This document shows, piece after piece, positions 5,100 to 27,585 of a stretch of 64,000 bases of DNA (within the stretch, counting starts at the first letter, position 1; each line of letters begins with the position of its first letter). The notes beneath the pieces are model-generated. The model saw only the letters and a list, made by a program, of their open reading frames with translations. It made no database searches and was not told the origin of the DNA. The stretch spans positions 1 through 64,000 of the IMG/VR virus record IMGVR_UViG_3300010389_000001; one strand, written 5' to 3'. The position numbers were made by a program, and so were the translations under genes.

Positions 5100-5137
5100 G
5101 CCCATCGATCCCCCCGGGGGTCGGTGGGCTTTTTTTT
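5100..5137 (+). terminator. Rho-independent terminator
   Basis: GC-rich hairpin and T8 tract after the stop codon. Confidence 0.7.
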
Positions 5138-5366
5138 GTAAACATTTTGCCCCCCCATGGGGGCGTGTGTGCTCGCTCCCTACGGTCGCCGGGCAAACTG
5201 TTTACATAAGCAAGTGTCAAGAAAGGGTCAAGAAAGCTTGACGCTTGTGCGTATGCGGTTAGGGCTCCCTTTCTTTCGTTGGGGCAATCTGTTTACACAA
5301 GCATGTGAGCAAAAATTGATCTCTTATCCTAGTCGGGTTATATGGTAGTGTAAGAAGGAGCAAGCA

Positions 5367-5690
5367 ATGCAGCCTGAAGCCCCCCACACCCTTCCACACC
5401 CGCCTGCAGGCTGGGTGTGGGAATTCGAAACTTTCCCAAGCGGATGGGTCGAGGTAGACGGACTCGTGTCCGCGCTCGATGCCGATGGGCCGCGCGTGTC
5501 CATCTTCGAGCCGGGCGTCGACCCTGCCGAGGACCTCGATTGGGAAATTATCCTTAGCGCTTCGCGCGTGGACGCGGACGAGGAAAACAACCTCGCTCGC
5601 GAAGAGTTCCCCCGGGGGACCCCGCGCGAGGTGGTGCTGGCCTGCGCAGTGGAGCTAGCTCGCTCATTCGTGAGCCTTAGCCAGCCCTGA
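5367..5690 (+). CDS. Hypothetical early protein
   Basis: Conserved promoter at 5316 and AAGGAG RBS. Confidence 0.7.
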   Translation: MQPEAPHTLPHPPAGWVWEFETFPSGWVEVDGLVSALDADGPRVSIFEPGVDPAEDLDWEIILSASRVDADEENNLAREEFPRGTPREVVLACAVELARSFVSLSQP

Positions 5691-5934
5691 CGGCCCCCCC
5701 CGGGTAGCAAGAGCTACCCGGGGGCATTGTTCGCTCTGGAATTGTAAACATTTTGCCCGGGGCATCCAGCCCCCGTGACGGCCTCCGGTGGGCGGCTGGG
5801 CAATCTATTTACATAAGCATGTGATGCTTCGGGCAAAATAGTTACATAGAGTTACACGCGTGCGGGCAAACCATTTACAGAGATTATTGATCTCTTATCC
5901 TAGTCGGGTTATATAGAAGTGTAAGGAGGTTGCC

Positions 5935-6432
5935 ATGCTGAACACCCGAGAAACCCAGCCCACCCTGATTATCGTCAGGGGACTCCCGGGCGCGGGCAAG
6001 AGCACCATCGCCGAGGAATTCGGCGCGCCCGTGCGGGAAGCTGACAAGTTTCCCGGGCTCTACACGTACCACTCCGATGGGCGCGTGGAGTTCCACGGCA
6101 TGAGCCGCATCGAGGGGATGCCGATGATAGCCAGGGCTCACACCTGGTGTCAAAACCAGGTTCGCGAAGACTTGTCTCGGCTGCCGCCTGTGGCGGTCGT
6201 TGCGAATACTTTCACGCAGGGCTGGGAGTTTGCGCCCTACGTGGAGATTGCGAAGGCTGCGGGAGCCCGCATTGTTGTTATCGACGTGTTCGATTCGGGC
6301 TACACCGATGAGGAGTTGGCCGACCGGAACACCCATGGTGTTCCCGAGCACGTTATCGCCCGTATGCGGGCCAATTGGGAGACCGATTGGCGAGCCGCCG
6401 ACCCCCGGCCCCCTTGGGAGAGGGGAGAGTAG
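5935..6432 (+). CDS. P-loop kinase/ATPase (AAA_33-like)
   Basis: Walker A RGLPGAGKST; VVANTF and RNTHGVP motifs. Confidence 0.85.
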   Translation: MLNTRETQPTLIIVRGLPGAGKSTIAEEFGAPVREADKFPGLYTYHSDGRVEFHGMSRIEGMPMIARAHTWCQNQVREDLSRLPPVAVVANTFTQGWEFAPYVEIAKAAGARIVVIDVFDSGYTDEELADRNTHGVPEHVIARMRANWETDWRAADPRPPWERGE

Positions 6433-6663
6433 GAGCCGCCCCTCCGGGGGCAATCCATTTACATAAGTGTGTAAACATTTTGCCCGGGTCTTTGACTGGA
6501 GCTGGCCTCCCGCCGGGCAATCTATTTACATAAGCATGTTATGCTTCGGGCAAAATGGTTACACAAGTTATACAGGGTCTCGGGCAAAATGGTTACAAAA
6601 GCATGTGAGCAATAATTGCTCTCTTATCCTAGTCGGGTTATAGGGTAGTGTAAGGAGGTTACC

Positions 6664-6978
6664 ATGGGAAACAAGGTTGTGGTTAATAGCTGCTACGGCG
6701 GCTTCAATCTGTCCGAGGACGCGAAGCGGCTGTTCAATCAGATCCAGATTGACCGGCACCTGCCGGTCACGGATTGGGATGCGATCTGGGTGGGCGACAT
6801 CCCGAGGCACCACCCGATCCTGGTTCGGGTGGTGGAGCTGCTGGGCGAGAGGGCCGGAGAACGCTACTCCGATCTCCGGGTCGTGGAGATTCCTGGGAAT
6901 CAGTACCTGATTTCCGAGTATGATGGATTTGAGTCGATCCAGACTCCGGAGGGGATGAACTGGACCTTCATTGACTGA
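6664..6978 (+). CDS. Conserved phage hypothetical protein
   Basis: KVVVNSCYGGFNLS, RHHPILVRVVE, EYDGFE; own promoter and RBS. Confidence 0.75.
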   Translation: MGNKVVVNSCYGGFNLSEDAKRLFNQIQIDRHLPVTDWDAIWVGDIPRHHPILVRVVELLGERAGERYSDLRVVEIPGNQYLISEYDGFESIQTPEGMNWTFID

Positions 6979-7123
6979 GGGTCGCCCCTCCGGGGCAATC
7001 TATTTACATAAGTATGTAAACAGTTTGCCCGAGCATTCCTTGGGAGCCCAGGCAATCTATTTACTCAGATTATTGATCTCTTATCCTAGTCGGGTTATAG
7101 GATAGTGTGAAAAGGAGAAGGCA

Positions 7124-7348
7124 ATGCCCTACGCTGACGACGGACAACTCTACCGCGCGCGAATCAGTGAAATCCTCTCGCGCCTGAACGAGATGCGCGA
7201 TGCACAGCTCCAGCGCACGCTGGAGGCCGCTCGCAGCGGCAATATGGTTGATCCGACGGTGATCGAGTATGATCACCAGAGCGCCGTGTACGAGATGCTC
7301 GCGGACGCCATCCAGGTGGTGGTGGAGGTGGCCTACGCTCCCCGGTAG
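7124..7348 (+). CDS. Hypothetical early protein
   Basis: Promoter at 7073 and AGGAG RBS. Confidence 0.7.
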   Translation: MPYADDGQLYRARISEILSRLNEMRDAQLQRTLEAARSGNMVDPTVIEYDHQSAVYEMLADAIQVVVEVAYAPR

Positions 7349-7544
7349 GCCGGCGCTCCGTCTGGAGGCCCCTCGCGGGGCAATCTGTTTACATACTTAT
7401 GTAACTATTTTGCCCGAGGCAGCGTTGTGATATTCGGGCAATCTATTTACATAAGTGCTCTGCCTTGAAAAGCAAAATATTTACAGAGAAATTCATTGAC
7501 TCTCACAGCTCACCTTGTTATGATAATGAAGTAAGGAGGTTTCC

Positions 7545-7898
7545 ATGACTGATTACGCCGACCTTGTTTCTCAGGCCGACCGGGCGCGGGCAGACATCGC
7601 GCACCTTCATCAACTCCATCTTTGGGACGGGGTTGACGTGTCAGCGGCGCTGGCTATGGCAGAGAAGCATCTAGTATGGATTGAGGAGCAGCTCACCGCT
7701 GCTACCATCGAGGTCATTCATGACATCGGCACGGCCCGCTGGAAGGAGCTTCCGGTGCCCGAAGTCTACAGCCCCGAATGGGAGAAATATTCTGCCCTCT
7801 CGCAGAAGCTTGACTCTGCTCGCCGCTACCTCGCCCAGCTCCGGCAGCTCGGCTTCCCGGCAGTACGCTGGTACCACGCTCCCCGCTTCCATGGCTAG
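7545..7898 (+). CDS. Hypothetical early protein
   Basis: TAAGGAGGT RBS; TTGACT-type promoter upstream. Confidence 0.7.
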   Translation: MTDYADLVSQADRARADIAHLHQLHLWDGVDVSAALAMAEKHLVWIEEQLTAATIEVIHDIGTARWKELPVPEVYSPEWEKYSALSQKLDSARRYLAQLRQLGFPAVRWYHAPRFHG

Positions 7899-8073
7899 CG
7901 GGGGGTTTCCCAGAATTGTAAATGATTTGCCCCGGGACTCTGTCCCGGGCCCCGGCTTCCAGCCGGGCAATCTATTTACATAAATGCGCTCCTTTGAAAA
8001 GAAAAATATTTACAGAGAAATCTGTTGCCCCTTTTGGTCAGCTCTGTTATGTAAGTAGAGTAAGGAGGACACT

Positions 8074-8451
8074 ATGTCGGTTCACACTTTTGAATCCTTC
8101 GAACTCTTTCACCACCTTCCGGCGGATGCCCTCGCGGGCCTGCCATTCGCGGTGGCGGAGAAAATGGATTTGGATTTCGTCGAGTGGGGCGGCGTCCATG
8201 GCGAGATCAGCGCGAAGCGCCTCGCGGACGCTGGCATCGAGGATCTCTCTAAGTGGGAGGTTATCGGAGGCAAGCTCATCGACCACAGCGGTTGGTGTGA
8301 CTTCGAGCAGAAAATGGAGTTTCACTATGAGGATCTTCGGATCCTAGTGCGCAAGTCTCATCTCGCGGAAGCCCAGCGGGCTTTCTGCGATGGCCCAGCT
8401 CTGACCCATAATCCTTTTGCGGCCGCTCTCTCGAATCTTCGGGGAGGCTGA
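8074..8451 (+). CDS. Hypothetical early protein
   Basis: TAAGGAGG RBS. Confidence 0.7.
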   Translation: MSVHTFESFELFHHLPADALAGLPFAVAEKMDLDFVEWGGVHGEISAKRLADAGIEDLSKWEVIGGKLIDHSGWCDFEQKMEFHYEDLRILVRKSHLAEAQRAFCDGPALTHNPFAAALSNLRGG

Positions 8452-8639
8452 GGCCTCCGGCCGGGCAAATTATTTACTTAAGTGTGTAAATGGTTTGCCC
8501 GGGTCTTTGGCTAGAGCCGGCCTCCGGCCGGGCAAACCATTTACCGTAATCTGTATGGTGTTCGGGCAATCTATTTACAGAGATTATTGATCCCTTATCC
8601 TAGTCGGGTTATGAGGCAGTGTGAACCCAGGAGGACACC

Positions 8640-8846
8640 ATGGCACGCATCCGCACCACTTACCAGCCCACTCCCGGCGCCAGCGAGGACCAGGTCCTCC
8701 AAATCGCATTTCGGTGCGGCCGGGACCTCGACCCCGACGATCGCCGTGCGCGGTGGATCGATGCCCTCGATGGCGCAGCCTACACGGCTGCGGTGGAGGC
8801 CTACCATGCAGGCCAGGCCGAGGCCTATGAGTGTGAGGGCTGGTAG
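8640..8846 (+). CDS. Hypothetical early protein
   Basis: Promoter at 8587 and AGGAGG RBS. Confidence 0.65.
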   Translation: MARIRTTYQPTPGASEDQVLQIAFRCGRDLDPDDRRARWIDALDGAAYTAAVEAYHAGQAEAYECEGW

Positions 8847-8915
8847 CCACCGGCCCGGCCGGGCAAACTATTTACAGAGTAAACATTTTGTTTTGCAAAT
8901 AGTTTGCCCCGGGGC

Positions 8916-9125
8916 TCAGTCTCCCTTGACGGTGCCCCGACAAGCCTTCCGGCTTTGCTCCTTTCGAGCATCCCCGTGGGATCCGGCCCGTCCAGAGTTC
9001 CCGAGAATCATCCCGAGCACTTCGAGGTTCCGTCGAGCCGGGGCAATTTGTTTACCGTTTTCCATTGCCCTCCGACGGGCGCGAGCCTTCCGAGCCTTCC
9101 GACGTTGCTTGTTTGAGCGCGACAT
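8916..9125 (-). CDS. Small Arg-rich basic protein (inverted module)
   Basis: AGGAGGT RBS on the minus strand; MSRSNKQRRKARKARARRR. Confidence 0.6.
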   Translation of the reverse strand: MSRSNKQRRKARKARARRRAMENGKQIAPARRNLEVLGMILGNSGRAGSHGDARKEQSRKACRGTVKGD

Positions 9126-9362
9126 GGCTACCTCCTAAGGAGGATTAACACGATGAACCGGGAAGGCTAGGAGAAATATCATCCGGGCAAATTATTTACA
9201 AATCCTTATTCGGGTGTCGGGCAAACTATTTACAAAGGCGTGTCAAGGCTTCGGGCAAACTATTTACACAAGTTGCACAGGGCTTCGAACAAAATGTTTA
9301 CATAGAAAATTGATCTCTTATCCTAGTCCGGTTATGTAGTAGTGCCACGAAGGAGAAGTATC

Positions 9363-10265
9363 ATGGCTAAGGCATCGACCCTGATTGAAGAAACCGACGC
9401 CCGTATCGCGGAGGGCATCATCGCGAGCATCGATGACGCGGAAGCCCGTGGCGTCAAGTGGGTCCCCGGGTGGGACCGTTCGGCTGGGTTCCCCTCGAAC
9501 CCGGTTACGGGCCGCCAGTATGGCGGAAACTACAACGGGCTCGTGCTGCTGATTGCAGCATCGCAATTCGGCGACAGCCGGTTCGCTGGCCGTAGCCAGT
9601 GGCGAACCAAGGGGAATGTCATTCCCCGGGACACCATTGGGACGAAAATCTTCTTTCCCCGGTTTGTGTGCGTCAAGTGCAACAAGATCGCGGGATTCGC
9701 GAAGAAGTGCTCCGGTTGTGGAGCCCAATTCAAGCGATACACCGACAAGCGGTGCATCGGCTTTGGCGAGTCTGAGGTTTTCAACAATTTGCAAGGCGAA
9801 ACCCCGTTGCCCGAGGCCGGGTCCGATTGGGAAGTTACGTGCGAGGAAGCTCGCAAGATTGTGGAGAAGGCTGGCGCGGATGTCCGCCACGGCGGTGGGC
9901 GTGCGTTCTACTCCCCGAAGGAGGACCGTATTCAGCTTCCCGAGATGGCTTCCTTTCACGATGAAGCGGCCTACTGGGCCACGAGCTTGCACGAGCATGC
10001 ACACTGGACCGGCCATAAGACGCGGCTCGCCCGTCCTGGCATCGTCAACATGACGGGCTTTGGTTCGGCCGAGTACGCATACGAGGAGCTTGTGGCGGAA
10101 ATTTCCGCGAGCTTCCTGTGCAAGCATGCGGGTGTGCAGCGTGAGGGTCTTGACGACCAGCATGCTGCCTACCTCGCCAGCTGGCGAAAGGCTCTGAGCG
10201 ACGACCCTTCCATCATCCGCAAGGCAGCGGGGGAAGCTGGCAAGGTGCTCCGCTACCTGACCTGA
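9363..10265 (+). CDS. ardC: ArdC-like antirestriction/ssDNA-binding protein (DUF1738 plus zincin domain) with a Zn-ribbon insert
   Basis: NPVTGRQYGG.N, AFYSPKEDRIQLP, LHEHAHWTGH, YAYEELVAE, HAAYLASW; CxxC...CxxC insert. Confidence 0.88.
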   Translation: MAKASTLIEETDARIAEGIIASIDDAEARGVKWVPGWDRSAGFPSNPVTGRQYGGNYNGLVLLIAASQFGDSRFAGRSQWRTKGNVIPRDTIGTKIFFPRFVCVKCNKIAGFAKKCSGCGAQFKRYTDKRCIGFGESEVFNNLQGETPLPEAGSDWEVTCEEARKIVEKAGADVRHGGGRAFYSPKEDRIQLPEMASFHDEAAYWATSLHEHAHWTGHKTRLARPGIVNMTGFGSAEYAYEELVAEISASFLCKHAGVQREGLDDQHAAYLASWRKALSDDPSIIRKAAGEAGKVLRYLT

Positions 10266-10563
10266 TCTGCCCGGCCCCGGGAATTCCCGGGGCCTTTCGC
10301 GCTCGTGTGAATGTAAATATTTTGTTTGCCGGAAATGTAAATGATTTGCCCGGGGTCGTGCCCCGATCCGGCCTGCGGCCGGGGCAAAATGTTTACGTAA
10401 GTGTGTAAAAAGAGGGTAAATTTGTAGGCAAAGTATTTACACAGAGTCACTCACACGCAGGCAAATCATTTACATTCTCTTTGCCTTCCTTCGGGCAATC
10501 TATTTACATAGAAAATTGATCTCTTATCCTAGTTGGGTTATAGGGTAGTGTAGGGAGGTTCCG

Positions 10564-10764
10564 ATGGATTGGCAAAGGTTGATTGCTCTGGCGATGATTG
10601 CAGAGCAGGTTGATGCTTGGCTCACAGCTAAGGTTTGCCTGGCCTTCTTCCAAAAGAATGGCATGGAAATTTCTGAAGATATGTGGCAAGAAGCCGCAAA
10701 GCTGGATATGGAGCTAGAAGGAATGATGATGACGGCCGACGGCTGGATATCCGGGGAAGCGTGA
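10564..10764 (+). CDS. Hypothetical early protein
   Basis: Promoter at 10516 and GGAGGT RBS. Confidence 0.6.
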   Translation: MDWQRLIALAMIAEQVDAWLTAKVCLAFFQKNGMEISEDMWQEAAKLDMELEGMMMTADGWISGEA

Positions 10765-10895
10765 GAAACCTGGGTCGGGGGGAGAGGGTGACTCCCCCCG
10801 GCCTCTCACCGCTCTGTAAATTGTTTGCCCGGGCTTTCCCCATTTTTTATTGCGCTTTTTCTCTGAATCGGTTATCAGTCTTGTAGGAGGTAGCG

Positions 10896-11081
10896 ATGGA
10901 AAAGCATTCCACCCACATCCGGTGCGCGTTCTGCGGCTGGAAAGCACTCAAGTTCCGCAAGCTAAAGTCTGGAAAGACTCGCGGCCCGGATGCAGCCTTT
11001 CAGATGCTGTTTAACCATGCGGCCGCGCATCATCCGGAGCAATTTGACAAGGCTTTTCCCGACCGCTTTGAGGAGGAGTGA
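10896..11081 (+). CDS. Small C2H2-type zinc-binding protein
   Basis: CAFC...HAAAHH; AGGAGGT RBS. Confidence 0.55.
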   Translation: MEKHSTHIRCAFCGWKALKFRKLKSGKTRGPDAAFQMLFNHAAAHHPEQFDKAFPDRFEEE

Positions 11082-11381
11082 GTCGGGGGGTAAATTATTT
11101 ACACAAGCGTGTAAATAGATTGCCTGGATGGCTGATGGATATTGTGGCTTCATTCGGGCAATCTATTTACATAATTAGACCCAACCCTCTGGGCAATCTA
11201 TTTACATTGCCTTCCCATCGTTCGGGCAAAATAGTTACCTAATCCATTTCTCTCCCGGGGCAAACTGTTTACACAATCGCCTTGGTCCCCGGGCAAACTG
11301 TTTACATAGAAAATTGATCTCTTATCCTAGTCGGGTTATATGGTAGCGTGAGGGACGAACCCTCGCAGGAGGTAAACAACA

Positions 11382-11783
11382 ATGGCTAACATCTTCACCA
11401 CCGAGACCACCGAGAGCGCCGTCCAGAACATCAAGGGCACCATGCGCGTGTACCGCGACGACGACGGAGAGGCTTACGTCTCTTTTGCAACGAACAAGGG
11501 GAAGGGCAGCGGTGCCCAGGTTATCCCCGTCGCTGAATTCGCCGATTGCGTTGCAGCCTTGGCGGAAATTTCTTCCAACGGTCTGCCTGAAGTGGAGGAG
11601 GAAATCTCTACCTCCGAGTCGATTCGTCGCACGGCAGCTCTGTCCGATGGGGTTATTTCCTTCCGGGTTCGCTCCGGAAAGGGAGCTAAGCCTGCCAAGG
11701 TTTCCAGCGATGAACTTGCCGACGTGGTAAAGCTTCTCCAGGGAACCGTCAAGGCTGTGGAGAAAGCAGCGAAGGATCTCTAG
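11382..11783 (+). CDS. Tandem-domain GKG protein, paralog 1
   Basis: SFATNKGKGSGAQVIP and SFRVRSGKGAKPAKV internal repeat; paralogs at 17372 and 34141. Confidence 0.8.
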   Translation: MANIFTTETTESAVQNIKGTMRVYRDDDGEAYVSFATNKGKGSGAQVIPVAEFADCVAALAEISSNGLPEVEEEISTSESIRRTAALSDGVISFRVRSGKGAKPAKVSSDELADVVKLLQGTVKAVEKAAKDL

Positions 11784-12377
11784 AGCGAAGGCCCATGGCA
11801 CGCGGGCTAAAGCGTGCCGCCCCTTGGGGCGTATGCCTGAAATGTAAATAAATTGCCCGGGGAGGTGCGCGTGCTTGCAAACGTGCTGGACCTTTCTAAC
11901 GCTCATGTTCCGGGCCCAACTCCAAATTGGGGACGGGTGCGCGTGGTTGAGCATGAATTCGGATGGATTGTCTTTATCTCTGGTGACCTTGGAGATAGGG
12001 AGGCCCGTCGAACGGTTCCCGATTGGATGCTTGGAATTTGGAAGCATGCTGTAAATGAGGGCTGCATCGCTGTCATATTCGACAGAGACGCGGACGTGGA
12101 TGATCGTTTTCTGAAATTCAATTGGTGAGCTAATGGAAGGTCGGCGAAAGCCGAACTTCCTTTCTTTGTTTTCTGTAAACATTTTGCCTGAGCTTCTTTG
12201 TAAATATTTTGCCCGGGCTTGTGTGTTGGTATCCGGAAAGCAAGGGGATATTACTTATCAGGTAATATCCCCGGGCAAAACGTTTACTTAATTGGTGCGC
12301 ACACGCAGGCAAACTGTTTACTCAGAAAATTGCTCTCTTATCCTAGTTGGGTTATAGGGTAGCGTAAGGAGGTTGAG

Positions 12378-12680
12378 ATGAGCAACTTGGTTGGTGCGCC
12401 GGAAGAGGTTTTGGTTGTCCACAGGCTTCTTGTGGAAAACGCTGAGGAAGCAGGGTACGATGCCTCCTTTGTGTATTGTCGCGAAGAGAGGTGCTATCCT
12501 GACTACGAGCCTTCGGGAAATTGGCTCGTCGGGCCAAACATGGAAGGCTTCGGAGGCACCATGGTTCGCACGTCTGCTGGTAATTGGTTTTACCGCGAGG
12601 CATGGAGCGGCGAGGACATCCCGATGAAGGCTGGCTTTGAAGAAGCCAAGTCCGATGCATCATGCTGGTTCACGGGGTGA
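12378..12680 (+). CDS. Hypothetical early protein
   Basis: Promoter at 12330 and RBS. Confidence 0.65.
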   Translation: MSNLVGAPEEVLVVHRLLVENAEEAGYDASFVYCREERCYPDYEPSGNWLVGPNMEGFGGTMVRTSAGNWFYREAWSGEDIPMKAGFEEAKSDASCWFTG

Positions 12681-13034
12681 CCCGCCCCTCCGGGGCAATC
12701 TATTTACAGAGCCTCCGGGCAAAATGTTTGCAAAACAAAATGTTTACCCTGTAAATAGATTGCCCGGTGGCTTTGGCTCAAACAAAATATTTACTTATCT
12801 CTGAGCCAGCAGGGCAAATCATTTACATAGAAAATTGATCTCTTATCCTAGTTCGGTTATATGGTAGCGTAAGGAGGTTGGAATGGAATGGACGGAAATT
12901 TACGTGGCTATCTACAGGGCTACGTGCGATAGGTGCGGGCATGCGGGTCAAGGTTGGTTCTGGATTAAGGGGACCCATGATAGGGGAACCCTCTGCATTG
13001 ACTGTTACCACCGGCAAGGTTAAGGGAGGCTCCT

Positions 13035-14097
13035 ATGGAAGATGAATTGGAATATCACCAATGCGACCGTGATTCGTCTTGGTGGGAAAATGATTATCAG
13101 GGAATTCCCCTTGCGAGGGTTTGCGATAGATGTTATGAAGCTAAGATGGCACGTTTCCGTCCGGAGATTCTCACCGGGTATTCTCAAGGCGACGTTGACG
13201 AGCCAATCGACCCCGATTGGTAATGGGTCGCCTGATTCCTTCTAAAGAATTGGATAAAGCAACACGCACAAGAGGTTTATCATGGCAAACTCAGACGTGA
13301 TCAAGGCATGGGTCCGCGAGGAAGCGTGCAGTTCACAAAACCTTAGCACCGATGGTATTTCTCTTTGGAGTTATCGTCTTAAGATTGGAGATACTATCTG
13401 CGGAAAGAAGGTCGTGTATGACCACACGTCCAATGGTCTAGGGTTTGTTTCCAGAACAACATCTAAGCATGTGGGTCTCGCTAAGTATGAATGCTCCAAG
13501 TAAACCAGGCTGGTATTGGTATAATGATGGTGGAGAATGGGAGGTAGTATTGGTTAGGGGAAATAAATTCCTTTACGTCAAGAGGCTTTCGGGTTATACT
13601 CAGTCGGGCGTGCCACTCTCATGCGTGCGTGGAACTTGGGGCTCTGAAGTTAAGCGAGGTGAATAATGGGCATCACAATCTTTCTAGAAGAAGAATACGG
13701 CTACCGTTACTGGCTGTGGGAAACGGGCATGGACGCGGAAGCGCTCATGTGGTGGTGGTCTAGCCTTTCCTCTGTCGATGAATACTTCTTCGATCCTACA
13801 GGGCTTCCTGGAAAGCTTACGCAGCTGTTTGACTTTACGGACACGCTTGTGGCTAACGTCCTCTCTGAAGATATTGAAGAGGATATTAAGAATAAGAAGC
13901 TAGAAAAGCTGTTTCGCAGTAATCCTATCTGGATTAAGAGCGGAGATATGGGCTATGACCCTCACGCGACCCATGTGGACGTGCCTGGACTAACGGACGG
14001 GTGGACCGCGCACGTCCACATGAACGATGATTCATGGATTAAGCCGCCTGGTAATAAAGAGATATGCCTTGGAGGTAACGATGGTTCGAACCGCTAG
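13035..14097 (+). CDS. Cluster of small hypothetical proteins (13035-13223, 13282-13503, ~13487-13666, 13666-14097)
   Basis: Tightly packed ORFs with RBSs after the promoter at 12835. Confidence 0.55.
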
Positions 14098-14818
14098 AAC
14101 CCTTGGTTACATAATCCTTAGCTTTCTGGATTATGTGGCCGAAAGAAGAGATAGCAGAGTGGGCATTAAAGATGCTGTTCAATCTGCTTTGAGACGCCCG
14201 GTTTAATCCGGGCTTTGTTGTGCCTTTCTTTGGCCTTATTACTTAGCTAAGTAATAAGCTCAGGCAAAATGTTTACTTAAATCTGAGATTCCCTCGGGCA
14301 AAATATTTACATTAAATGTGAGAACTACTTACATTCCATCGGGCAAATTGTTTACTTAACCAGTAAGAGGCCATTACATAACATAGTAAATGGTTTGCCC
14401 GGCGCGCTTTTTGTTTTCTATCTTTTCTGAATAATTAAGACTCAAGTTATTATTTGGGAAATAAATAATAACTTAACTCTACCTTAATAGGGGCTAATGA
14501 TTATTTTTCAAAATCCATTTAATCATCCAAGTCGCGGTAACCAGATGAGGATTCTCTGGATTGTTAATATGAAGGTTTCTTAGAAGCCAGCGAAGATTAG
14601 GATTCGTTAGATTCTTTCTCATTTGGGGAACCGACATTTGATCCAAAACCTTTTGGAGTTCCGCCTTCTGATTGGTCAGATCCTTAACAGACATAATCTA
14701 TAGCCCTCTTTGTTAAAAGATTTCTACTGGTTTGTTTTGTTATTTGACTTGCTTTGTTAGATGCCCCTCGCGCGGGGGGCGAGAAGGGGGCGTGTGCGCG
14801 CGGAAGAACGCGTTAGCT

Positions 14819-15028
14819 TTACGGGCTTTTTTCTCTTTTTGAAGCTCCGGGCGGAGTCGGGCTGATCTTCTTTCGGATCCTTAGCTTTTCTTGAATATCT
14901 AACTCACACATCCCACAACATGATCCAGCTCCGGAAGCTTGAGTTATTTCATGAAGATCCTTTGCTCCCCTGTCAATTAAGGCCTCTACTGCTTTGTCTG
15001 TAATTCCTTTGCAGATGCAGAGTATCAT
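14819..15028 (-). CDS. bfd: Bacterioferritin-associated ferredoxin-like [2Fe-2S] protein
   Basis: MILCICKGIT...GAGSCCGMC matches the BFD CxC...CxxC pattern. Confidence 0.8.
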   Translation of the reverse strand: MILCICKGITDKAVEALIDRGAKDLHEITQASGAGSCCGMCELDIQEKLRIRKKISPTPPGASKREKSP

Positions 15029-15409
15029 TGCTTTGCCTTTTTGGGGAGTCCCCTTGTTAAGTGTATAATAAATTACCAGATTGATTTTGTCAACTATTTT
15101 TTTTAAAAAGTTATTCCGACCATTGCGAGCCCGATGTAATCTATCTTTCTTTGATCTTCTGCCCGGTTATTTGCGGGGCAAAAAAAGTTGTAAAAAAATT
15201 CTTTTGTCTTTTTAATCATTTTCTTTTCGCCTTTCTAATCTTTATTTATTTTGGCTGCGGCTAGCCGCCGGTTGCCCCTGGGGTTTTTATAACCCGTTTT
15301 CCTCATGGCCGCCCCATTTTTTTGGAGCCAACCCTATGGGGCAAAATATTAACAGAAAAAATTGATCTCTTATCCTAGTCGGGTTATATAGAGGTGCAGG
15401 GAGGTTGGA

Positions 15410-15736
15410 ATGGGACTTGACCAATACGCTTTTGCTGTGAAGGACGATGAGCGGATCGAGATTATGTACTGGAGGAAGCATGCCAACCTCGAAGGTTGGA
15501 TGGCTGATCTTTATAAGCAACGCGGTGGAAAGGGGCAGTTTAACTGCGTTGACTTGAAGCTCTTTGAAGATGATATTCTTCGATTGAGAAAAGAGCATCG
15601 TGAGCTTCGCAAGGCTTCCGGGTTCTTTTGGGGTGAATCAAGTCTGGCAAAGGTGGAAAATACTCACGAGTTTATTCAGAAGGCTTTGCAATATCAGAGC
15701 GAAGGCTATGATATTATCTACACCTCCTGGTGGTAG
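15410..15736 (+). CDS. Conserved phage hypothetical protein
   Basis: MGLDQY...YWRKHANLEGWM...GFFWG...YTSWW; promoter at 15362. Confidence 0.75.
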   Translation: MGLDQYAFAVKDDERIEIMYWRKHANLEGWMADLYKQRGGKGQFNCVDLKLFEDDILRLRKEHRELRKASGFFWGESSLAKVENTHEFIQKALQYQSEGYDIIYTSWW

Positions 15737-16427
15737 GGATTGTTAGCAATAAAGCTAGCTACTTTATTGCGGCATAATGGGCGAGAGTTACTCCGGGGTT
15801 CGACTCCCCGGTCGTCAAGAGACGGAATTTGGCCAGTAACCACTCGGTTTCTAAATAAGCGTTGTGGCTAATGCTTATTTAGAGGCGAAGGGAAAGGCGG
15901 GTTATGAAGCCACTTGTAACCCGCCCGACCCTGACCCAGCCGCTGGGCAATCTATTTACCGAAATTATTGCTCTCTTATCCTAGTTCGGTTATAGGGTAG
16001 TGTGGGAGGTGATCGATGGAATGGACGGCTACTTCAATTCTCTCCGGGGTCGAGCGGACCTTGGTTGTCCCTGGCTTGACCGAGGACGCCGTAACCCGTT
16101 GGCAGGCCGGTGAGCTAATCCAGAATGCTATGCCGGATATTGATCCGGAGTGGCGCGAGTTTGTTATGACCGGGATTACTCCCGATGAATGGACCAATCT
16201 TATTGGCGAGGGAGGTGAGTGATGGCCTTTGGAATTCGTCGCCGCAGTCGGAACAGTGATGCTTACGAAGTTTGTATCACCAATATGTATGGAATGGTTC
16301 GACTAGAAGATTTCTGGTCGCCATATAAGGGTGCTACAAAAGAAGAGTGTGAAGAGTATATCGAGCGGATTAAAGCCGCATCAAAAGAGATTGAGAAAGA
16401 TATTCTCGGAAGGAGAAGGAGAGGTGA

Positions 16428-16700
16428 GTGATGGAAGGTAATGCTGATAATGAGCGTCCCTTGTGGAGCCCTTCTCCGCGTCAATCTCCGCCATCATATG
16501 GAGAGGTTCCTCTTCAATTGCTTCGCTGGGGATTGGGGCGCGGAGAGTTTACTAGCCGTCAAGCTTCAGAGGGACTTAATGTTGCTTATCGTGTCGCGGT
16601 TAGAGGGGTAAATAAACTCGCCGATCTTGGATTGGCTGTTGACGTTGGAAAGGATCGGCAAGCCACGCTGTGGACCGTTTCTGTTTCCTGGTCTGATTAA
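16428..16700 (+). CDS. Possible winged-helix DNA-binding protein
   Basis: FTSRQASEGLNVAYRVAVRGVNKLADLGLAV is HTH-like. Confidence 0.45.
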   Translation: MMEGNADNERPLWSPSPRQSPPSYGEVPLQLLRWGLGRGEFTSRQASEGLNVAYRVAVRGVNKLADLGLAVDVGKDRQATLWTVSVSWSD

Positions 16701-16855
16701 CTAATTCCTCCGGGGTAAGATCTTGGCATCTACCCCGCCGGGGCAAACTATTTACAAAGCCCCGGGGCAAAACATTTACAAAACAAAATATTTACATTGT
16801 AAATGTTTTGCCCCGGCCTTGTTACTTCGCGAAGTAACAAGGCCTTTGAGGCTTT

Positions 16856-17140
16856 TTATTCCGCCCTCACAACCTCCCCTGTAAACATCCCATAGACAAC
16901 CTCTAGGAGATTTTCTTTCCCAAGGTCTTCGGGGTTTACATAATTCCCCCATGGCACAGGAGACGTGGTGTAAGTGCCATTCCACTCGCCACCTAGAATC
17001 ATGACAGTTTCCTCATGAGACTTGGGGACAGTTACCATAGTGTCTCCCCTCTTATATGAGACTCCAACACGGGTCAGTTGCATAGCAGACTTCTCAAAGC
17101 CAAGCTTCCGCATCCGGGCAAAAAAGCTACGTCGGGTCAT
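16856..17140 (-). CDS. Hypothetical protein (inverted module)
   Basis: Conserved promoter on the minus strand at 17161-17187 and AGGAGGT RBS. Confidence 0.7.
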   Translation of the reverse strand: MTRRSFFARMRKLGFEKSAMQLTRVGVSYKRGDTMVTVPKSHEETVMILGGEWNGTYTTSPVPWGNYVNPEDLGKENLLEVVYGMFTGEVVRAE

Positions 17141-17371
17141 GGGCTACCTCCTACGCCTCTACATAACCCGACTAGGATAAGAGGCAAATAATTTGGGGCG
17201 GGGCCTCCGGGCAAACTATTTACATAATCCCAGGGGCAAACTGTTTACCGAAATTATTGACCTCTTATCCTAGTTCGGTTATATGGTAGTGTGAGGAGGG
17301 GGAGGCAGAAAAAAGCGAAAAACGCTTGACCCCTCATCGCCAGCCTGTTAATCCACCGTAGGAGGTATCCG

Positions 17372-17803
17372 ATGGCTAACATCTTCAGCAACGACAGCAA
17401 CGAGAGCCCGCTCACCGTTATCCGCCAGACCATGAGCGTTTCGCTCGACGACGGGGGAACCCCGGTTGTCAGCTTTGCCACGAACCGTGGCAAGGGTTCG
17501 GGCGCCCAGACCATGCCGGTCGACCAGTTTGATGCCTATGTGGCTACTCTGGAGGGTTACGTCGCTGATGGCATTCCAGAGGGAACGCCAGAGGAAAACC
17601 TGACTGCTGCGGAGTCTGTGACCCGCACTATCAAGCTGGATGACGGGGTTATCTCGTTCCGTGTCCGGTCTGGTAAGGGCGCGAAGCCCGCGAAGATTCC
17701 TTCCGAGGACTTCGCGGAGACTGTCAAGCTGCTTCGCTCGACTGTTGCGGCCGTTCAGTCTGCGGGGGAGGGCCTTACCTCTTCCGATGACAGCGACGAG
17801 TAA
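17372..17803 (+). CDS. Tandem-domain GKG protein, paralog 2
   Basis: High similarity to 11382-11783. Confidence 0.8.
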   Translation: MANIFSNDSNESPLTVIRQTMSVSLDDGGTPVVSFATNRGKGSGAQTMPVDQFDAYVATLEGYVADGIPEGTPEENLTAAESVTRTIKLDDGVISFRVRSGKGAKPAKIPSEDFAETVKLLRSTVAAVQSAGEGLTSSDDSDE

Positions 17804-17856
17804 ACGCTCGCACACCCGCTGGCACACCGGGTAAAGTGTGCCACGTTTTATTAACC

Positions 17857-17890
17857 GGGGGAGCGCGACTTTTCGCGCTCCCCCTTTTTT
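17857..17890 (+). terminator. Rho-independent terminator
   Basis: GGGGGAGCGCGA/TCGCGCTCCCCC stem and T-tract. Confidence 0.75.
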
Positions 17891-18293
17891 GTGTCCGCGC
17901 GCCAGTTTATGTAAACATTTTGTTTCCCCTTATCTAAGGGTCGACCACATGCGCCCGCGCAAAATATTTACAAAACTTGGGGCAAAATGTTTACAAAGGC
18001 TAAATGAAAATGATTTTCAATTAGATTACTATGTAATATAGAATAAAATGAATTTTTATATTATATATACTATGTAATAGTAATATTTCAGGGGCCTAAG
18101 AATTTTTCTGGTTAGCCCTTTAGTCCGCATCATTCTCAGGGCAATCTGTTTACACAAAGTTCTGATCCACCCTGTAAAGAGATTGTGAAGGCAGCCAGGA
18201 ATTTCTTGCACCATATCCCGGCTCGGTTATATGTAGGCGAGGGTAGCGAAGCACGCCAAACCCTCGCAACATAGAAAGAAGGGATAAGACGTT

Positions 18294-18746
18294 ATGTCCA
18301 AGACTCCTAGTGACCTCTCTCCAGTTGAAGCTATGGCCCTTGCTCAAGCTATCCGTATCTCGGATTGCAATGATGTTTCTGCTTTGCCGGAACAGACCTC
18401 TCAACCCGTGGACTTTACTGTCCATGTAAAGGGGAATGTTACGCGCGGCGTAGGCACTCCCAGGCGGGGCACTAACCGCGCACGTACGAGCGCAAGCATG
18501 ATCATGCTACTTGTGTCCTCTGGCGTTACTCGCAACCACTCTCCACGTCAGATTATCGAGAAGTGGTCAGAGATTGGCACGCTTGATAAGGATGGTTTCA
18601 GCCTTCTCTATGAGTCTCTTTCCGATGAAGAGAGGGCGCTTTATGATGAGTGCATCTCTCTTTTTGAACAAGAGATTGTTGGAAAGCTGCCTCTTATCCC
18701 TGTAAAGGGTGGAGTAAAGTTTAAGGGTAACATTACAAAAGAATAA
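18294..18746 (+). CDS. Hypothetical protein
   Basis: Follows the promoter variant at 18206. Confidence 0.65.
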   Translation: MSKTPSDLSPVEAMALAQAIRISDCNDVSALPEQTSQPVDFTVHVKGNVTRGVGTPRRGTNRARTSASMIMLLVSSGVTRNHSPRQIIEKWSEIGTLDKDGFSLLYESLSDEERALYDECISLFEQEIVGKLPLIPVKGGVKFKGNITKE

Positions 18747-18841
18747 GGTTATGGCGCCCCGTTTGGGGCGCCTTTAACCGGCTCTTAAACTTTATTGCAT
18801 CATATCCAGGCTCGGTTATAGGTAAGTGTAGGGAGGTTACC

Positions 18842-19480
18842 ATGAACTTGACGGAAGCAAAGCTGATTACTGGCCATAAGTCTGGACTCGGAAAGCCCAG
18901 TAAGATGCCCGGTTTCTCTACTGCTATCTCTCCAAAGTCTTGCAAGGTTGGCTCCAAGCTTGCCAAGGTTGAGGGGTCTGTTTGCTCTAAGTGTTACGCT
19001 TTCAAGGGAAACTATACCTTCCCTGGTGTTGTGGCCGCTCATAAGGCGCGAGAGGCCGCGCTCTCTCATCCCCAATGGGTTGAGGCTATGACCCTGCTTA
19101 TCGGTCATTACACCGATGAGTCTGATCCTTACTTCCGGATTCATGATTCCGGAGACTTGCAGGATGAAAACCACCTTATGTTGTGGGTTCAGGTTGCCCG
19201 TAACTTGCCTTGGGTTAACTTCTGGATGCCCACTAAGGAAAGCAGCCTAGTAAAGCAGGTTATGTCAAAGGTTTCTGACTGGCCAGAAAACCTGACTATC
19301 CGCATCTCTGCCCCGATGATTGGGAAGTCTCCTCCGGCTTCTATGGCGGGCTACCTTACCTCGACTGTTCAGGCAGAGGAAGGCGAAGAGTGCCGCGCTT
19401 ACACCCGAGATAACAAGTGCGGTCCCTGCCGCGCCTGTTGGGATAAGCGGGTGCAAAACATCGATTACCATGTGCAGTGA
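18842..19480 (+). CDS. Gp88-like Cys-rich phage protein
   Basis: SKMPG, C..GSKL...CSKCYA, FRIHDSGD, CGPCRACWD. Confidence 0.75.
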   Translation: MNLTEAKLITGHKSGLGKPSKMPGFSTAISPKSCKVGSKLAKVEGSVCSKCYAFKGNYTFPGVVAAHKAREAALSHPQWVEAMTLLIGHYTDESDPYFRIHDSGDLQDENHLMLWVQVARNLPWVNFWMPTKESSLVKQVMSKVSDWPENLTIRISAPMIGKSPPASMAGYLTSTVQAEEGEECRAYTRDNKCGPCRACWDKRVQNIDYHVQ

Positions 19481-19807
19481 TTGGAGGTAACAATGGAATA
19501 TAAGACGCATAATAACGCGCAGATTAACCCCACTGGCACCCACTTGCAGGGTTATCTAAATGCTGGATATAACGAACTAGTAAGGGCCTTTGGGTACCCG
19601 CAAGGTTCAGATGGTTATAAAGTCGATGCAGAGTGGACTATTAAGTTTTCCAGCGGGGAAGTAGCTACTGTTTATAACTGGAAGAATGGCATTAACTATT
19701 GCGGTGCCTCTGGCCTTCATGCGAGCCAGATCACACACTGGCATATTGGCGGGTTTAGCGAAGAGGTTGTCGACCTTGTAAAGTCGGCCCTCGGCCAGGA
19801 TCAATAA
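19481..19807 (+). CDS. Conserved phage hypothetical protein
   Basis: GTHLQG, KVDAEW, ATVYNWK, WHIGG. Confidence 0.65.
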   Translation: MEVTMEYKTHNNAQINPTGTHLQGYLNAGYNELVRAFGYPQGSDGYKVDAEWTIKFSSGEVATVYNWKNGINYCGASGLHASQITHWHIGGFSEEVVDLVKSALGQDQ

Positions 19808-21003: not shown

Positions 21004-21007
21004 TCCA

Positions 21008-27582: not shown

Positions 27583-27585
27583 TCT

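What the first reader, a model, noticed from the sequence alone, without database searches (positions are those of the whole stretch)
6448..11126. Inverted box pairs with a conserved asymmetric 6-bp core just after stop codons resemble site-specific recombination sites
Seen: 16-bp arm, 6-bp core, inverted 16-bp arm at 6448 (core TAAGTG), 6993 (TAAGTA), 7378 (TACTTA, the reverse complement of TAAGTA), 8463 (TAAGTG) and 11089 (CAAGCG), most within ~10-50 bp of a stop codon. Known: tyrosine-recombinase sites (dif, loxP) are inverted arms around an asymmetric 6-8-bp core. Inference: these could be cassette-shuffling sites making an integron-like gene bank in a phage, or dimer-bound roadblock terminators. 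No recombinase is visible in this window.
Basis: partly seen in the sequence, partly recalled or inferred. Interest (0 to 1): 0.75.

Follow-up and report, generated by a model that had tools for sequence, protein, structure and literature searches.

The report
Phased protein-binding boxes between phage cassettes
The five "inverted box pairs" are real, but they are one arrangement of about 80 copies of a conserved 16-bp box that sits, spaced in step with the DNA helix, between the terminator and promoter of nearly every early gene of an uncultured marine jumbo phage; the boxes look like docking sites for a DNA-binding protein and like hot spots for ordinary homology-driven gene shuffling, not like recombinase sites.

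Summary
**Observation:** confirmed.

**What they are:**
- They are a subset of 76 copies of one asymmetric box, GGGCAA-WMTR-TTTACA (0.45 expected by chance).
- The boxes are confined to 5-36 kb of a 232-kb jumbo-phage contig. In the 4.1-18 kb stretch, 64 of 65 are intergenic.
- Box centres lie 22-25, 33-36, 44-46 or 54-57 bp apart, a period of about 11 bp, in direct, convergent and divergent orientation alike.
- One box sits 8 nt upstream of the -35 of a conserved promoter (13 of 14 copies).
- A reverse box follows terminators.

**Selection:**
- The two hexamers are under purifying selection (3.5% divergence against 11% at third codon positions).
- The middle four positions (14%) and the "cores" (8%) are not.
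- Paired arms do not co-vary.

**Relatives:**
- The box is conserved in every relative examined, along with three PUR-like paralogues.
- Cassette order differs among relatives. Junctions fall at box edges or at other short repeats, never in a core.

**Recombinases:** no tyrosine or serine recombinase, Y1 transposase or rve integrase was found. A UvsX-like recombinase is present.

**Best reading:** operator-like sites of an unidentified DNA-binding protein, inside PeSL-like regulatory modules that recombine by homology.

The parts
6448..6485 (.). Convergent box pair 1 (forward box 6448-6463, spacer TAAGTG, reverse box 6470-6485). It lies 15 nt after the stop of the AAA_33 kinase-like gene.
6993..7030 (.). 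Convergent box pair 2 (spacer TAAGTA). It lies 14 nt after the stop of gene 6664-6978. The forward box's GGGGC forms the 3' arm of a 5-bp GC hairpin.
7378..7415 (.). Convergent box pair 3 (spacer TACTTA), 29 nt after the stop of gene 7124-7348.
8463..8500 (.). Convergent box pair 4 (spacer TAAGTG), 11 nt after the stop of gene 8074-8451. It is part of an 82-nt module that is 84% identical to 6448-6529.
11088..11125 (.). Convergent box pair 5 (spacer CAAGCG; arms GGGT.. and AGGC..), 6 nt after the stop of gene 10896-11081.
5138..35521 (.). The whole box field: about 76-80 copies of ccyC-GGGCAA-WMTR-TTTACA-nA (58 on the + strand, 19 on the - strand). It contains 57 of the genome's 58 exact copies.
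6515..6597 (+). Example of a head-to-tail array (boxes 6515, 6548, 6582; 33-34-bp period) running into promoter 6615.
9185..9302 (+). Four-box array (9185, 9219, 9253, degenerate 9287; 34-bp period) upstream of the ArdC-like gene's promoter.
11156..11306 (+). Longest array (five boxes at 11156, 11191, 11224, 11258, 11291), upstream of PUR-like paralogue 11382-11783.
6615..6663 (+). One of 14 copies of the conserved promoter-leader module in the window's cassette block (4-17 kb): ATTGATCTCTTATCCTAGTCGGGTTAT, then TATAGG-type -10 and AGGAGG. In 13 of the 14 a box ends 8 nt before the TTGAT -35. The other copies start at 4078, 5315, 5886, 7072, 8586, 9309, 10515, 11313, 12329, 12834, 15361, 15967 and 17256; the copy at 4078 has no box.
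5100..5152 (+). Pattern A gene end: a strong hairpin plus T8 terminator, followed at once by a single reverse box (5138-5152). The same layout is found in relative L025.
11382..11783 (+). PUR-like paralogue 1 (133 aa, 54% identical to P0001). Candidate box binder.
17372..17803 (+). P0001, PUR-like paralogue 2 (143 aa; internal tandem repeat). The model matches Pur-alpha repeat I-II (Z 8.1). A homologue is present in every box-bearing relative examined; 592 homologues were found.
34141..34569 (-). PUR-like paralogue 3 (142 aa, 55% identical to P0001), near the far edge of the box field.
16856..17140 (-). P0002, a 94-aa protein divergently transcribed from P0001 and conserved in all relatives. 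Confident model, no convincing fold match.

Best explanation
**What the box is.** The box is a duplex-DNA recognition site for a sequence-specific DNA-binding protein. It has two different hexamers, GGGCAA and TTTACA, one helical turn apart.

**How the sites are laid out.** Sites are placed in helical register at multiples of about 11 bp, so bound proteins lie on one face of the DNA and can contact one another across a whole intergenic region:
- a reverse box directly behind the terminator of the upstream gene;
- one to five forward boxes leading to a fixed position about 8 nt upstream of the -35 of the downstream promoter.

It is used where the terminator hairpin is weak.

**Proposed function (inferred).** The bound protein co-regulates the early cassette promoters, by activation or timed shut-off. 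It also insulates neighbouring cassettes by reinforcing termination as a roadblock.

**Side effect (shown).** The modules of box, promoter and leader (45-107 nt, 13 or more copies) are the commonest repeats in the region. The phage's own homologous-recombination machinery, or microhomology-mediated events, exchange, delete and duplicate cassettes there, as PeSL modules do in T4-type phages.

**Binder not identified.** The candidates, in order, are the three PUR-like paralogues inside the box field, the phage's HU/IHF-family protein, and a host factor.
For: **Shown**
1. The box is a discrete unit. There are 76 copies against 0.45 expected. In 4.1-18 kb, 64 of 65 are intergenic although 65% of that stretch is coding (P about 1e-28).
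2. Helical phasing holds across orientations. Spacings of adjacent centres (n=77; window plus three relatives) fall at 22-25, 33-36, 44-46 and 54-57. None falls at 26-32 or 37-43 for direct or convergent pairs. The best period is about 11.25 bp, R=0.76. Array spacers keep their length (17-19 nt) but not their sequence (33% pairwise identity).
3. Selection acts on the hexamers only. Against relatives 92-97% identical in sequence, the divergences are:
   - fixed box positions, 3.5%;
   - middle four positions, 14.3%;
   - cores, 8.3%;
   - other intergenic DNA, 6.0%;
   - third codon positions, 11.1%.
4. The arms of a pair are independent instances of the box. They share 0, 2, 1, 2 and 2 of the 4 middle positions, against 2.14 for random box pairs.
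5. The register to the promoter is fixed in the window and in distant relatives L064 and L066.
6. The box is conserved across the clade (GGGCAA-N4-TT[T/G]AC) while shared genes fall to about 70% nucleotide identity and P0001 homologues to 62-67% amino-acid identity. Counts are 31 boxes in each of L057, L061 and L063, 14 in L064, 19 in L066 and 15 in G002. In the two contigs long enough to tell, G000 and G002, the boxes are confined to one region.
7. A reverse box directly follows terminators in both the window and G002.
8. Recombination leaves its traces.
   - Gene order differs among relatives.
   - Junctions lie at box edges: X4 11290>9290, X3 10396>11291, X1 10396>7049, X3 6565>8563 and L071 at box 6515.
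   - Array copy number varies.
   - UvsX-like and SbcC-like genes are present.

**Leads for the binder**
- P0001 has a tandem-repeat fold matching Pur-alpha I-II (Foldseek probability 0.96-0.99; VIA Z 8.1 over 103 residues).
- There are three paralogues, all inside the box field.
- The longest array lies upstream of one of them.
- An HU/IHF-family gene lies at 97.3 kb.
- From my own knowledge, the box contains CAA-N4-TT(T/G), the core of the E. coli IHF consensus WATCAANNNNTTR.
Against: - No binding was tested. The one complex prediction was not folded and gives no evidence.
- PUR and Whirly proteins are best known as single-strand binders, and Z 8 is borderline by the tool's own note.
- P0001 is acidic.
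- Activation, repression and roadblock cannot be told apart without RNA data.
- Boxes 22 bp apart would clash if the binder had an IHF-sized footprint.
- Part of the spacing regularity could be inherited from duplicated modules, although the spacer sequences argue against that.
Confidence: 0.55

Rival explanations
1. The boxes are read by RNA polymerase itself. TTTACA/TTGACA would act as a -35-like hexamer and GGGCAA as an upstream element, recognised by host sigma-70 holoenzyme or by one of the phage's own sigma factors. The arrays would then be promoter-proximal recruitment or decoy sites that concentrate polymerase on the early cassettes.
For: - The 3' hexamer equals the -35 consensus in relatives.
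- The promoter-proximal box can be read as TTTACA-16-TATCCT.
- The box sits in UP-element territory 8 nt upstream of TTGAT.
- The phage encodes sigma-70-family proteins.
Against: - Array and terminator-side boxes have no -10 at 16-18 bp. The next conserved thing there is the next GGGCAA.
- Canonical promoters in the same region place TTGACT 10 nt downstream of a box (7496).
- Reverse boxes would fire antisense into the upstream gene.
- GGGCAA is as conserved as TTTACA.
Confidence: 0.15
2. The palindromes act in RNA, as terminator or attenuator hairpins, RNase III processing sites or 3' stabilisers of the upstream mRNA. Single boxes would be decayed halves.
For: - The pairs lie 6-29 nt after stop codons.
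- Two of the five fold as full 16-bp-arm hairpins with z -4.3 and -4.5.
- Small GC hairpins overlap the forward box and were scored terminator-like.
Against: - The arms do not co-vary, and their middles match less than random box pairs do.
- In two of the five the palindrome is not the minimum-energy fold.
- No U-run follows.
- Most boxes are single or direct repeats upstream of promoters, with the same phasing.
- There is no Rfam family.
Confidence: 0.1
3. The pairs are site-specific recombination sites. A tyrosine-type recombinase would bind the inverted arms and exchange strands in the 6-bp core, moving cassettes as in an integron.
For: - The geometry is right: inverted 16-bp arms around an asymmetric 6-bp spacer.
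- The region is organised in cassettes and gene order varies among relatives.
- The genome is only 68% complete, so a recombinase could be missing.
Against: - No Phage_integrase, Resolvase, Y1_Tnp or rve protein in 232 kb.
- The cores are not identical between sites and are not conserved.
- No joint or breakpoint lies in a core.
- Only 5 of about 80 boxes are in this arrangement.
- The cassettes carry their own promoters.
- Some indels use box-free microhomology.
Confidence: 0.05
4. The boxes are selfish or neutral repeats (REP/BIME- or MITE-like) that spread with the regulatory modules and have no function of their own.
For: - The larger 45-107-nt modules are clearly duplicated.
- Arrays expand and contract.
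- The boxes are extragenic, often just after stop codons, and occur as inverted pairs, as BIMEs do.
Against: - Purifying selection is limited to the two hexamers.
- Spacing is kept while spacer sequence is free.
- The register to the -35 is fixed in phages whose promoters have diverged.
- The box is conserved across a clade with 62% protein identity.
- There is no RAYT/Y1 transposase.
Confidence: 0.08

Closest known systems
PeSL (promoter-early stem-loop) regulatory cassettes of T4-type phages (PMC2839356, PMC4122927)
   Same: - Composite intergenic modules run from stop codon through stem-loop terminator, A/T-rich stretch, sigma-70-like promoter and Shine-Dalgarno site to the start codon.
- They are concentrated in hyperplastic regions upstream of small ORFans.
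- Indels and replacements between relatives have their junctions in the modules.
- The phage has its own homologous-recombination genes.
   Different: - This phage is not T4-like (TerL at most 25% identical to any deposited phage).
- Its modules carry an extra, discrete 16-bp box in helically phased arrays and pairs. The PeSL papers read here describe no such feature.
- Minicircles were not tested.
Stoperators of Cluster A mycobacteriophages (L5 gp71-type repressor; PMC9283540)
   Same: - Dozens of copies of a short asymmetric site spread over the genome in short intergenic gaps, many near stop codons.
- The site is read by a protein that uses two domains on two half-sites.
   Different: - Stoperators are 13 bp, are spread over the whole genome and belong to a temperate immunity system.
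- The box here is confined to about 30 kb, forms phased arrays and pairs, and sits at a fixed promoter-upstream position.
- No repressor or integrase is seen here.
Tyrosine-recombinase core sites (dif, loxP, FRT) and integron attC
   Same: Inverted arms flank a 6-8-bp asymmetric spacer. attC sites also lie directly after cassette stop codons.
   Different: - No recombinase was found.
- The spacers are neither identical nor conserved.
- No crossover is seen in them.
- The cassettes have their own promoters.
- Most copies are not in the inverted-pair arrangement.
IHF/HU-family sites, e.g. SPO1 TF1 at early promoters (from my own knowledge)
   Same: - The site is asymmetric, with CAA-N4-TT(G/T) as in WATCAANNNNTTR.
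- The phage encodes a type II DNA-binding protein.
- The sites cluster at early promoters of a large lytic phage.
- The 33-34-bp array period is close to one IHF footprint.
   Different: - GGG replaces WAT.
- The 5' flank is C-rich rather than A/T-rich.
- The 22-bp pairs are too close for two IHF-size footprints.
- No binding data exist.
REP/BIME extragenic palindromes of enterobacteria
   Same: Extragenic repeats found just after stop codons, as inverted pairs, in many copies.
   Different: - A REP unit is itself a palindrome that acts in RNA and is mobilised by RAYT.
- Here the unit is not palindromic, the arms do not co-vary, and no Y1 transposase is present.

Membership tests
Tyrosine-recombinase core-type site (dif/loxP-like) | Two inverted recombinase-binding arms around a 6-8-bp asymmetric overlap region | tested here: met
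   Five 16+6+16 sites read in the sequence.
Tyrosine-recombinase core-type site (dif/loxP-like) | A cognate recombinase is encoded or available | tested here: inconclusive
   PF00589 and PF00239 gave no match at E<=1 in 232 kb. The record is only 68% complete, and a host enzyme cannot be excluded.
Tyrosine-recombinase core-type site (dif/loxP-like) | The overlap region is identical between partner sites and conserved | tested here: not met
   The cores are TAAGTG, TAAGTA, TACTTA, TAAGTG and CAAGCG. Core divergence against near relatives is 3/36, compared with 32/924 for the arm hexamers.
Tyrosine-recombinase core-type site (dif/loxP-like) | Rearrangement breakpoints fall inside the overlap region | tested here: not met
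   None of about 19 joints in four runs lies in a core, though only 15 were shown and the rest were not inspected. None of the differences from L070, L071 or L072 lies in a core either. The assemblies are short-read contigs, so rare events would be missed.
Integron (attC cassette array) | IntI integrase, attI and a common Pc promoter, with promoterless cassettes each ending in an attC | tested here: not met
   No integrase was found. In the 4-17-kb cassette block, 14 genes or short operons carry the conserved promoter module and two others (7545, 8074) have their own sigma-70-type promoter. attC secondary structure was not modelled.
PeSL-type mobile regulatory cassette | A composite intergenic motif of stem-loop terminator plus sigma-70-like early promoter, repeated many times | tested here: met
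   Thirteen copies of a 73-107-nt module. Hairpins lie behind stop codons. This rests on sequence only; promoter and terminator activity were not assayed.
PeSL-type mobile regulatory cassette | Concentrated in hyperplastic regions, and junctions of indels and replacements between relatives lie in the motif | tested here: met
   Gene order is variable upstream of about 15 kb and conserved downstream. Junctions lie at box or module edges. Some indels use other short repeats.
PeSL-type mobile regulatory cassette | Circular excision products (minicircles) | not testable with these tools
   Only assembled contigs of four runs could be laid.
PeSL-type mobile regulatory cassette | The host phage belongs to the T4 superfamily | tested here: not met
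   TerL is at most 25% identical to any deposited phage, and the best hits are Bacillus siphoviruses. No deposited phage holds a P0001 homologue. The claim is therefore 'works like', not 'is a member'.
Stoperator-type repressor sites | Many copies of an asymmetric site in intergenic gaps | tested here: met
Stoperator-type repressor sites | A cognate immunity repressor in a temperate phage | tested here: not met
   No integrase was found, and no helix-turn-helix (HTH) repressor turned up among 40 proteins scanned. The binder is unknown.
IHF/HU-family binding site | Match to WATCAANNNNTTR with an A/T-rich 5' flank | tested here: inconclusive
   The box has CAA-N4-TT(T/G), but GGG in place of WAT and a C-rich flank. 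The consensus is recalled from memory.
IHF/HU-family binding site | A type II DNA-binding protein is available | tested here: met
   Bac_DNA_binding match, E 1.3e-24, at G000:97354-97614.
Intrinsic terminator | A GC-rich hairpin followed by a U-run | tested here: inconclusive
   Strong hairpins precede single reverse boxes (5100-5129 with T8). The 5-bp hairpins overlapping forward boxes are followed only by AATCTATTTAC. The palindromes themselves have no U-run.

The most novel reading that the evidence does not exclude
An abundant, uncultured clade of marine jumbo phages may carry a dedicated cis/trans system. In it, three PUR-like (Whirly-type) paralogues, or the phage's HU/IHF-like protein, would bind helically phased arrays of one conserved asymmetric box. 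The resulting nucleoprotein scaffold would switch, insulate and perhaps synapse exchangeable early-gene cassettes, including anti-restriction genes. One protein would then couple regulation of the accessory-gene bank to its high recombination rate.
Probability: 0.25. Interest if true: 0.7.

Novelty: new variant of a known kind. Interest (0 to 1): 0.5.

Why it matters
- **How the gene bank is built.** The region shows how a large lytic phage keeps a fast-changing bank of early genes. These include an ArdC-like anti-restriction gene and many ORFans with 55-61% GC, in a phage whose other DNA is mostly 40-45% GC. All sit under one regulatory grammar: a standard terminator, box array and promoter module that any incoming gene can be dropped between.
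- **An experimental handle.** The box is conserved across a clade with hundreds of metagenomic members, so finding its binder would open up early-gene control in phages that have no cultured representative.
- **A caution for genome scans.** Inverted arms around a 6-bp spacer are not, on their own, evidence of a recombinase site.

Tried and rejected
- **Exact box in IMG/VR.** The exact 16-mer gave only 16 single chance hits. Megablast of 5-13 kb against deposited phages found nothing.
- **Relatives through cassette proteins in IMG/VR.** The 104-aa protein gave one distant hit and the 125-aa protein gave none. The ArdC-like protein led to G001 and G002.
- **Promoter pattern in JGI metagenomes.** Only three short contigs were found.
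- **Exact-protein look-ups.** The 125-aa and 133-aa proteins returned only the window's own contig. The 61-aa protein gave the useful near relatives.
- **Pairs of contigs carrying the same P0001 homologue.** They turned out to be identical over their overlap, so no breakpoints could be read from them.
- **Transposon-end reading.** I considered a TG...CA reading, with abutted ends as at an IS circle junction. I rejected it because the internal boxes have the wrong orientation for nested end sites, and there is no rve or Y1 transposase.
- **Sigma-54 promoter reading.** I rejected this for the window. The box spacing is one base shorter than TGGCAC-N5-TTGC, and the window has no such motif.
- **Complex prediction (P0001 with box DNA).** Not folded; no evidence either way.
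- **Annotation of candidates.** The protein atlas gave nothing for P0002 and only unnamed or sub-threshold neighbours for P0001. Pfam and PHROGs found nothing for P0001-P0003.
- **P0002 model.** It has no convincing structural neighbour.

Full report
**1. Where the window lies.** The window is the first 64 kb of a 232,533-bp IMG/VR virus record that CheckV estimates to be 68% complete, so the whole genome is about 340 kb. The record encodes the following:
- large terminase and portal;
- a family-B DNA polymerase;
- an SbcC-like protein and a UvsX-like recombinase;
- two GroEL homologues;
- an HU/IHF-family protein;
- at least two sigma-70-family proteins;
- Hsp20 and an Hc1 histone-like protein.

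No deposited phage is close. TerL is at most 25% identical to any, and the P0001 family has no deposited homologue. Fragments 85-100% identical to 6-12 kb occur in some 20 marine, sediment and aquaculture metagenome runs.

**2. The observation.** All five 16+6+16 sites are present as described, 6-29 nt after the stop codons of genes 5935-6432, 6664-6978, 7124-7348, 8074-8451 and 10896-11081. The arm is one instance of a box whose logo is ccyC-GGGCAA-W(A/C)T(A/G)-TTTACA-nA.
- There are 76 copies with at most 1 mismatch, against 0.45 expected.
- 57 of the genome's 58 exact copies lie between 5.1 and 35.5 kb.
- 64 of 65 copies in 4.1-18 kb are intergenic, although 65% of that stretch is coding.

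**3. Anatomy of an intergenic region.** Relative to the direction of transcription, the order of elements is as follows.
- **A terminator hairpin.** Pattern A is a strong hairpin (-26 to -38 kcal/mol), sometimes with a T-run. Pattern B is a 5-bp GC hairpin whose 3' arm is the GGGGC of a forward box.
- **A reverse box.** It stands alone in pattern A. In pattern B it is the right arm of the convergent pair.
- **A spacer of about 28 nt.** This puts the reverse box and the next forward box 45-46 bp apart, centre to centre.
- **One to five forward boxes** with a 33-35-bp period.
- **A conserved promoter-leader module**.
  - The motifs run TTGATC/TTGCAC, then TATCC, then GGT-TATAGG, then AGGAGG.
  - Of 29 copies between 4 and 80 kb, 14 lie in the 4-17-kb cassette block and 13 of those have a box ending 8 nt before the -35.
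  - The remaining copies mostly have an A/T tract there instead.

Two cassettes (7545, 8074) use a canonical TTGACT-17-TATGAT-type promoter with a box-like element at the same distance.

**4. Tests that bear on mechanism.**
- **Phasing.** Adjacent box centres (n=77; window plus L057, L061, L063) fall at 22-25, 33-36, 44-46 and 54-57 bp.
  - None falls at 26-32 or 37-43 for direct or convergent pairs.
  - The best period is about 11.25 bp, with mean resultant length 0.76.
  - Spacers in the arrays are 17-19 nt long but only 33% identical to one another, so length rather than sequence is kept.
- **Constraint.** Against relatives 92-97% identical (L070, L071, L049, L050), divergence by sequence class is:

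| Sequence class | Differences | Divergence |
|---|---|---|
| Twelve fixed box positions | 32/924 | 3.5% |
| Middle four box positions | 44/308 | 14.3% |
| Six-bp cores | 3/36 | 8.3% |
| Promoter module | 29/495 | 5.9% |
| Other intergenic DNA | 212/3531 | 6.0% |
| Codon positions 1 and 2 | 139/6130 | 2.3% |
| Codon position 3 | 340/3062 | 11.1% |

- **Arm covariation.** The two arms of the five pairs share 0, 2, 1, 2 and 2 of the four middle positions (mean 1.4). Random box pairs share 2.14. There is no selection for a hairpin or cruciform.
- **RNA folding.** The full palindrome is the minimum-energy fold in only two of the five (z -4.5 and -4.3). In 6448 and 6993 the upstream GC hairpin competes for the box's GGGC. 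None is followed by a U-run. Rfam finds only four tRNAs in 1-40 kb.
- **The 'core'.** Its nA..Tn pattern is what two abutting arms give if each prefers A two positions past the box, as 59 of 77 boxes do.

**5. Relatives.** The ArdC-like protein led to IMG/VR contigs G001 and G002 (87-88 kb, 26% complete).
- Their box variant is GGGCAA-AAAN-TTGACA.
- It is again confined to about 22 kb of raised GC.
- It again follows terminators directly and precedes a promoter and leader of the same style.

P0001 (17372-17803) has 592 homologues in marine metagenomes. Contigs carrying them all hold the box:

| Locus | P0001 homologue identity | Boxes |
|---|---|---|
| L057, L061, L063 | 86-91% | 31 each |
| L064 | 63% | 14 |
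| L066 | 64% | 19 |

- In L064 and L066 the box sits at the same distance from a diverged promoter (TTGATTTC..CATCGGTTAC).
- Upstream of the P0002/P0001 pair, gene content and order differ between G000, L057, L061 and L063. For example, the AAA_33 gene is upstream of ArdC in G000 and downstream of it in L057.
- Metallophos, PolyA_pol and DUF3228 cassettes are absent from G000.
- Downstream of the pair the order is conserved.

**6. Breakpoints.**
- **In Logan contigs of four runs**, alternative joints link different boxes.
  - X4 joins 11177-11290 to 9290-9410 through CGGG, which recreates a canonical box.
  - X3 joins 10396 to 11291.
  - X1 joins 10396 to 7049, through an 18-20-nt foreign spacer.
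  - X3 joins 6565 to 8563.
  - X3 lacks one 35-bp array unit (11155>11191).
  - X3 lacks cassette 8640-8846.
- **In near relatives.**
  - L071 has a different upstream gene, and homology to the window starts at the 5' edge of box 6515.
  - L070 has an extra 58-bp reverse-box unit at 10301-10353.
  - L070 has a 330-bp extra gene at 13261-13268, flanked by a leader repeat of about 15 nt.
  - L070 lacks 16226-16416, lying between 14-nt repeats at translationally coupled gene junctions. The last two events involve no box.
- **L048** keeps 90-93% identity in both regulatory flanks, while the enclosed gene is only 33% identical in protein.
- **No joint lies in a 6-bp core.** With no tyrosine or serine recombinase, Y1 transposase or rve integrase and a UvsX-like recombinase present, exchange by homology or microhomology between the repeated 45-107-nt modules is the economical explanation. 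This is what was shown experimentally for PeSLs in T4-type phages (PMC2839356; PMC4122927).

**7. Who binds the box? (leads only)**
- **P0001** is a tandem repeat of two units of about 55 residues.
  - Its AlphaFold model (pLDDT 78) matches Pur-alpha repeat I-II. Foldseek probability is 0.96-0.99, and VIA-align gives Z 8.1 over 103 residues at 3.0 Å. That is borderline by the tool's own note.
  - G000 has three paralogues (54-55% identical), all inside the box field. The longest array precedes one of them.
  - A two-repeat monomer would suit two unlike half-sites one turn apart, as the two-domain stoperator repressor does (PMC9283540).
- **The HU/IHF-family protein** is the second candidate, because the box contains CAA-N4-TT(T/G). 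The consensus is recalled from memory.
- **P0002** is conserved next to P0001 but has no convincing fold match.
- **The complex prediction** was not folded and is not evidence.

**8. Verdict.**
- The recombinase-site interpretation is not supported.
- The cassette-bank idea is supported, but with a homology mechanism.
- The roadblock idea remains open.
- The best reading is protein-binding operator arrays embedded in PeSL-like modules, with confidence 0.55.
  - **Shown:** the box as a selected, phased, clade-conserved duplex element, and cassette shuffling with junctions at repeats.
  - **Inferred:** that a protein binds it, which protein, and whether it activates, represses or blocks.

Noticed in passing
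window 3680-4075: Two other repeat arrays lie just upstream of the first cassette promoter, which has no box. One has about 7 copies of ACTGCAAAGCTTWAAAAAA (3690-3835). The other has about 15 copies of TGTCAA(G/A) at an 11-bp period (3880-4070), ending in three copies of TGTCACA. They look like iterons (origin, partition or terminal function?) and sit at the boundary between the 36% GC block and the 55-61% GC block.
   Followed up: no
window 4001-12000 compared with the rest: GC is 53-61% over 4-12 kb, and 55-61% in the genes there. It is 36-38% in 1-4 kb and mostly 40-45% elsewhere. Intergenic DNA stays AT-rich. G002 has the same local rise (53-55%) in its box region, which suggests imported genes framed by native regulatory DNA.
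   Followed up: partly
window 4088-79117 (29 sites): There is a phage-wide promoter class, TTGCAC/TTGATC-..-TATCC-N6-8-GGT-TATAGG, with an unusually conserved spacer. It has 29 copies up to 80 kb. The 14 copies in the 4-17-kb block carry a proximal box (all but the one at 4078). The phage also encodes sigma-70-family proteins (51467-52321 and about 109.2 kb). Which polymerase reads these promoters is unknown.
   Followed up: partly
L025 5800-10100; G002 59-70 kb; L064: Relatives carry a second intergenic motif that matches the sigma-54 promoter consensus (TGGCAC-N5-TTGCA). There are 13 copies in G002, on both strands, 5 in L064 and none in the window. A palindrome ATGCCAA-T-TTGGCAT is also present.
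   Followed up: partly
window 9363-10265: An ArdC-like anti-restriction protein (ArdcN plus zincin-like MPTase-PolyVal; phrog_7245) is one of the cassettes. Its neighbours include an AAA_33 kinase-like gene (5935-6432) and many ORFans.
   Followed up: partly
window 8916-9125 (-): A 69-aa protein with an arginine-rich N-terminus (reminiscent of a lambda N-type motif) is the only minus-strand gene in 4-12 kb. It is conserved in L057, L064 and G002, and it contains the only box that lies inside a coding region (9041).
   Followed up: no
window 8861-8909, 12693-12765, 16741-16813: Composite elements combine a box, a second box or a TTTGC-variant box, an AAAACAAAAT half-box and a reverse box 33-34 bp away. 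The one at 16741-16813 lies between convergent genes and is replaced in L061 and L063 by a perfectly symmetrical pair.
   Followed up: partly
L048 against window 4010-5412: The regulatory flanks are 90-93% identical, while the enclosed 306/327-aa gene is only 33% identical in protein. This is either allelic replacement or very fast divergence of a cassette gene.
   Followed up: partly
window 20273-21556; 23814-30047: Hsp20, an Hc1 histone H1-like protein (59 aa) and a peroxiredoxin-like gene lie in a row. Four tRNA genes are at 23814, 26076, 27505 and 29975.
   Followed up: no
G000:95447-95461: The only exact box outside the 5-36-kb field lies about 1.9 kb upstream of the HU/IHF-family gene (97354-97614).
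   Followed up: no
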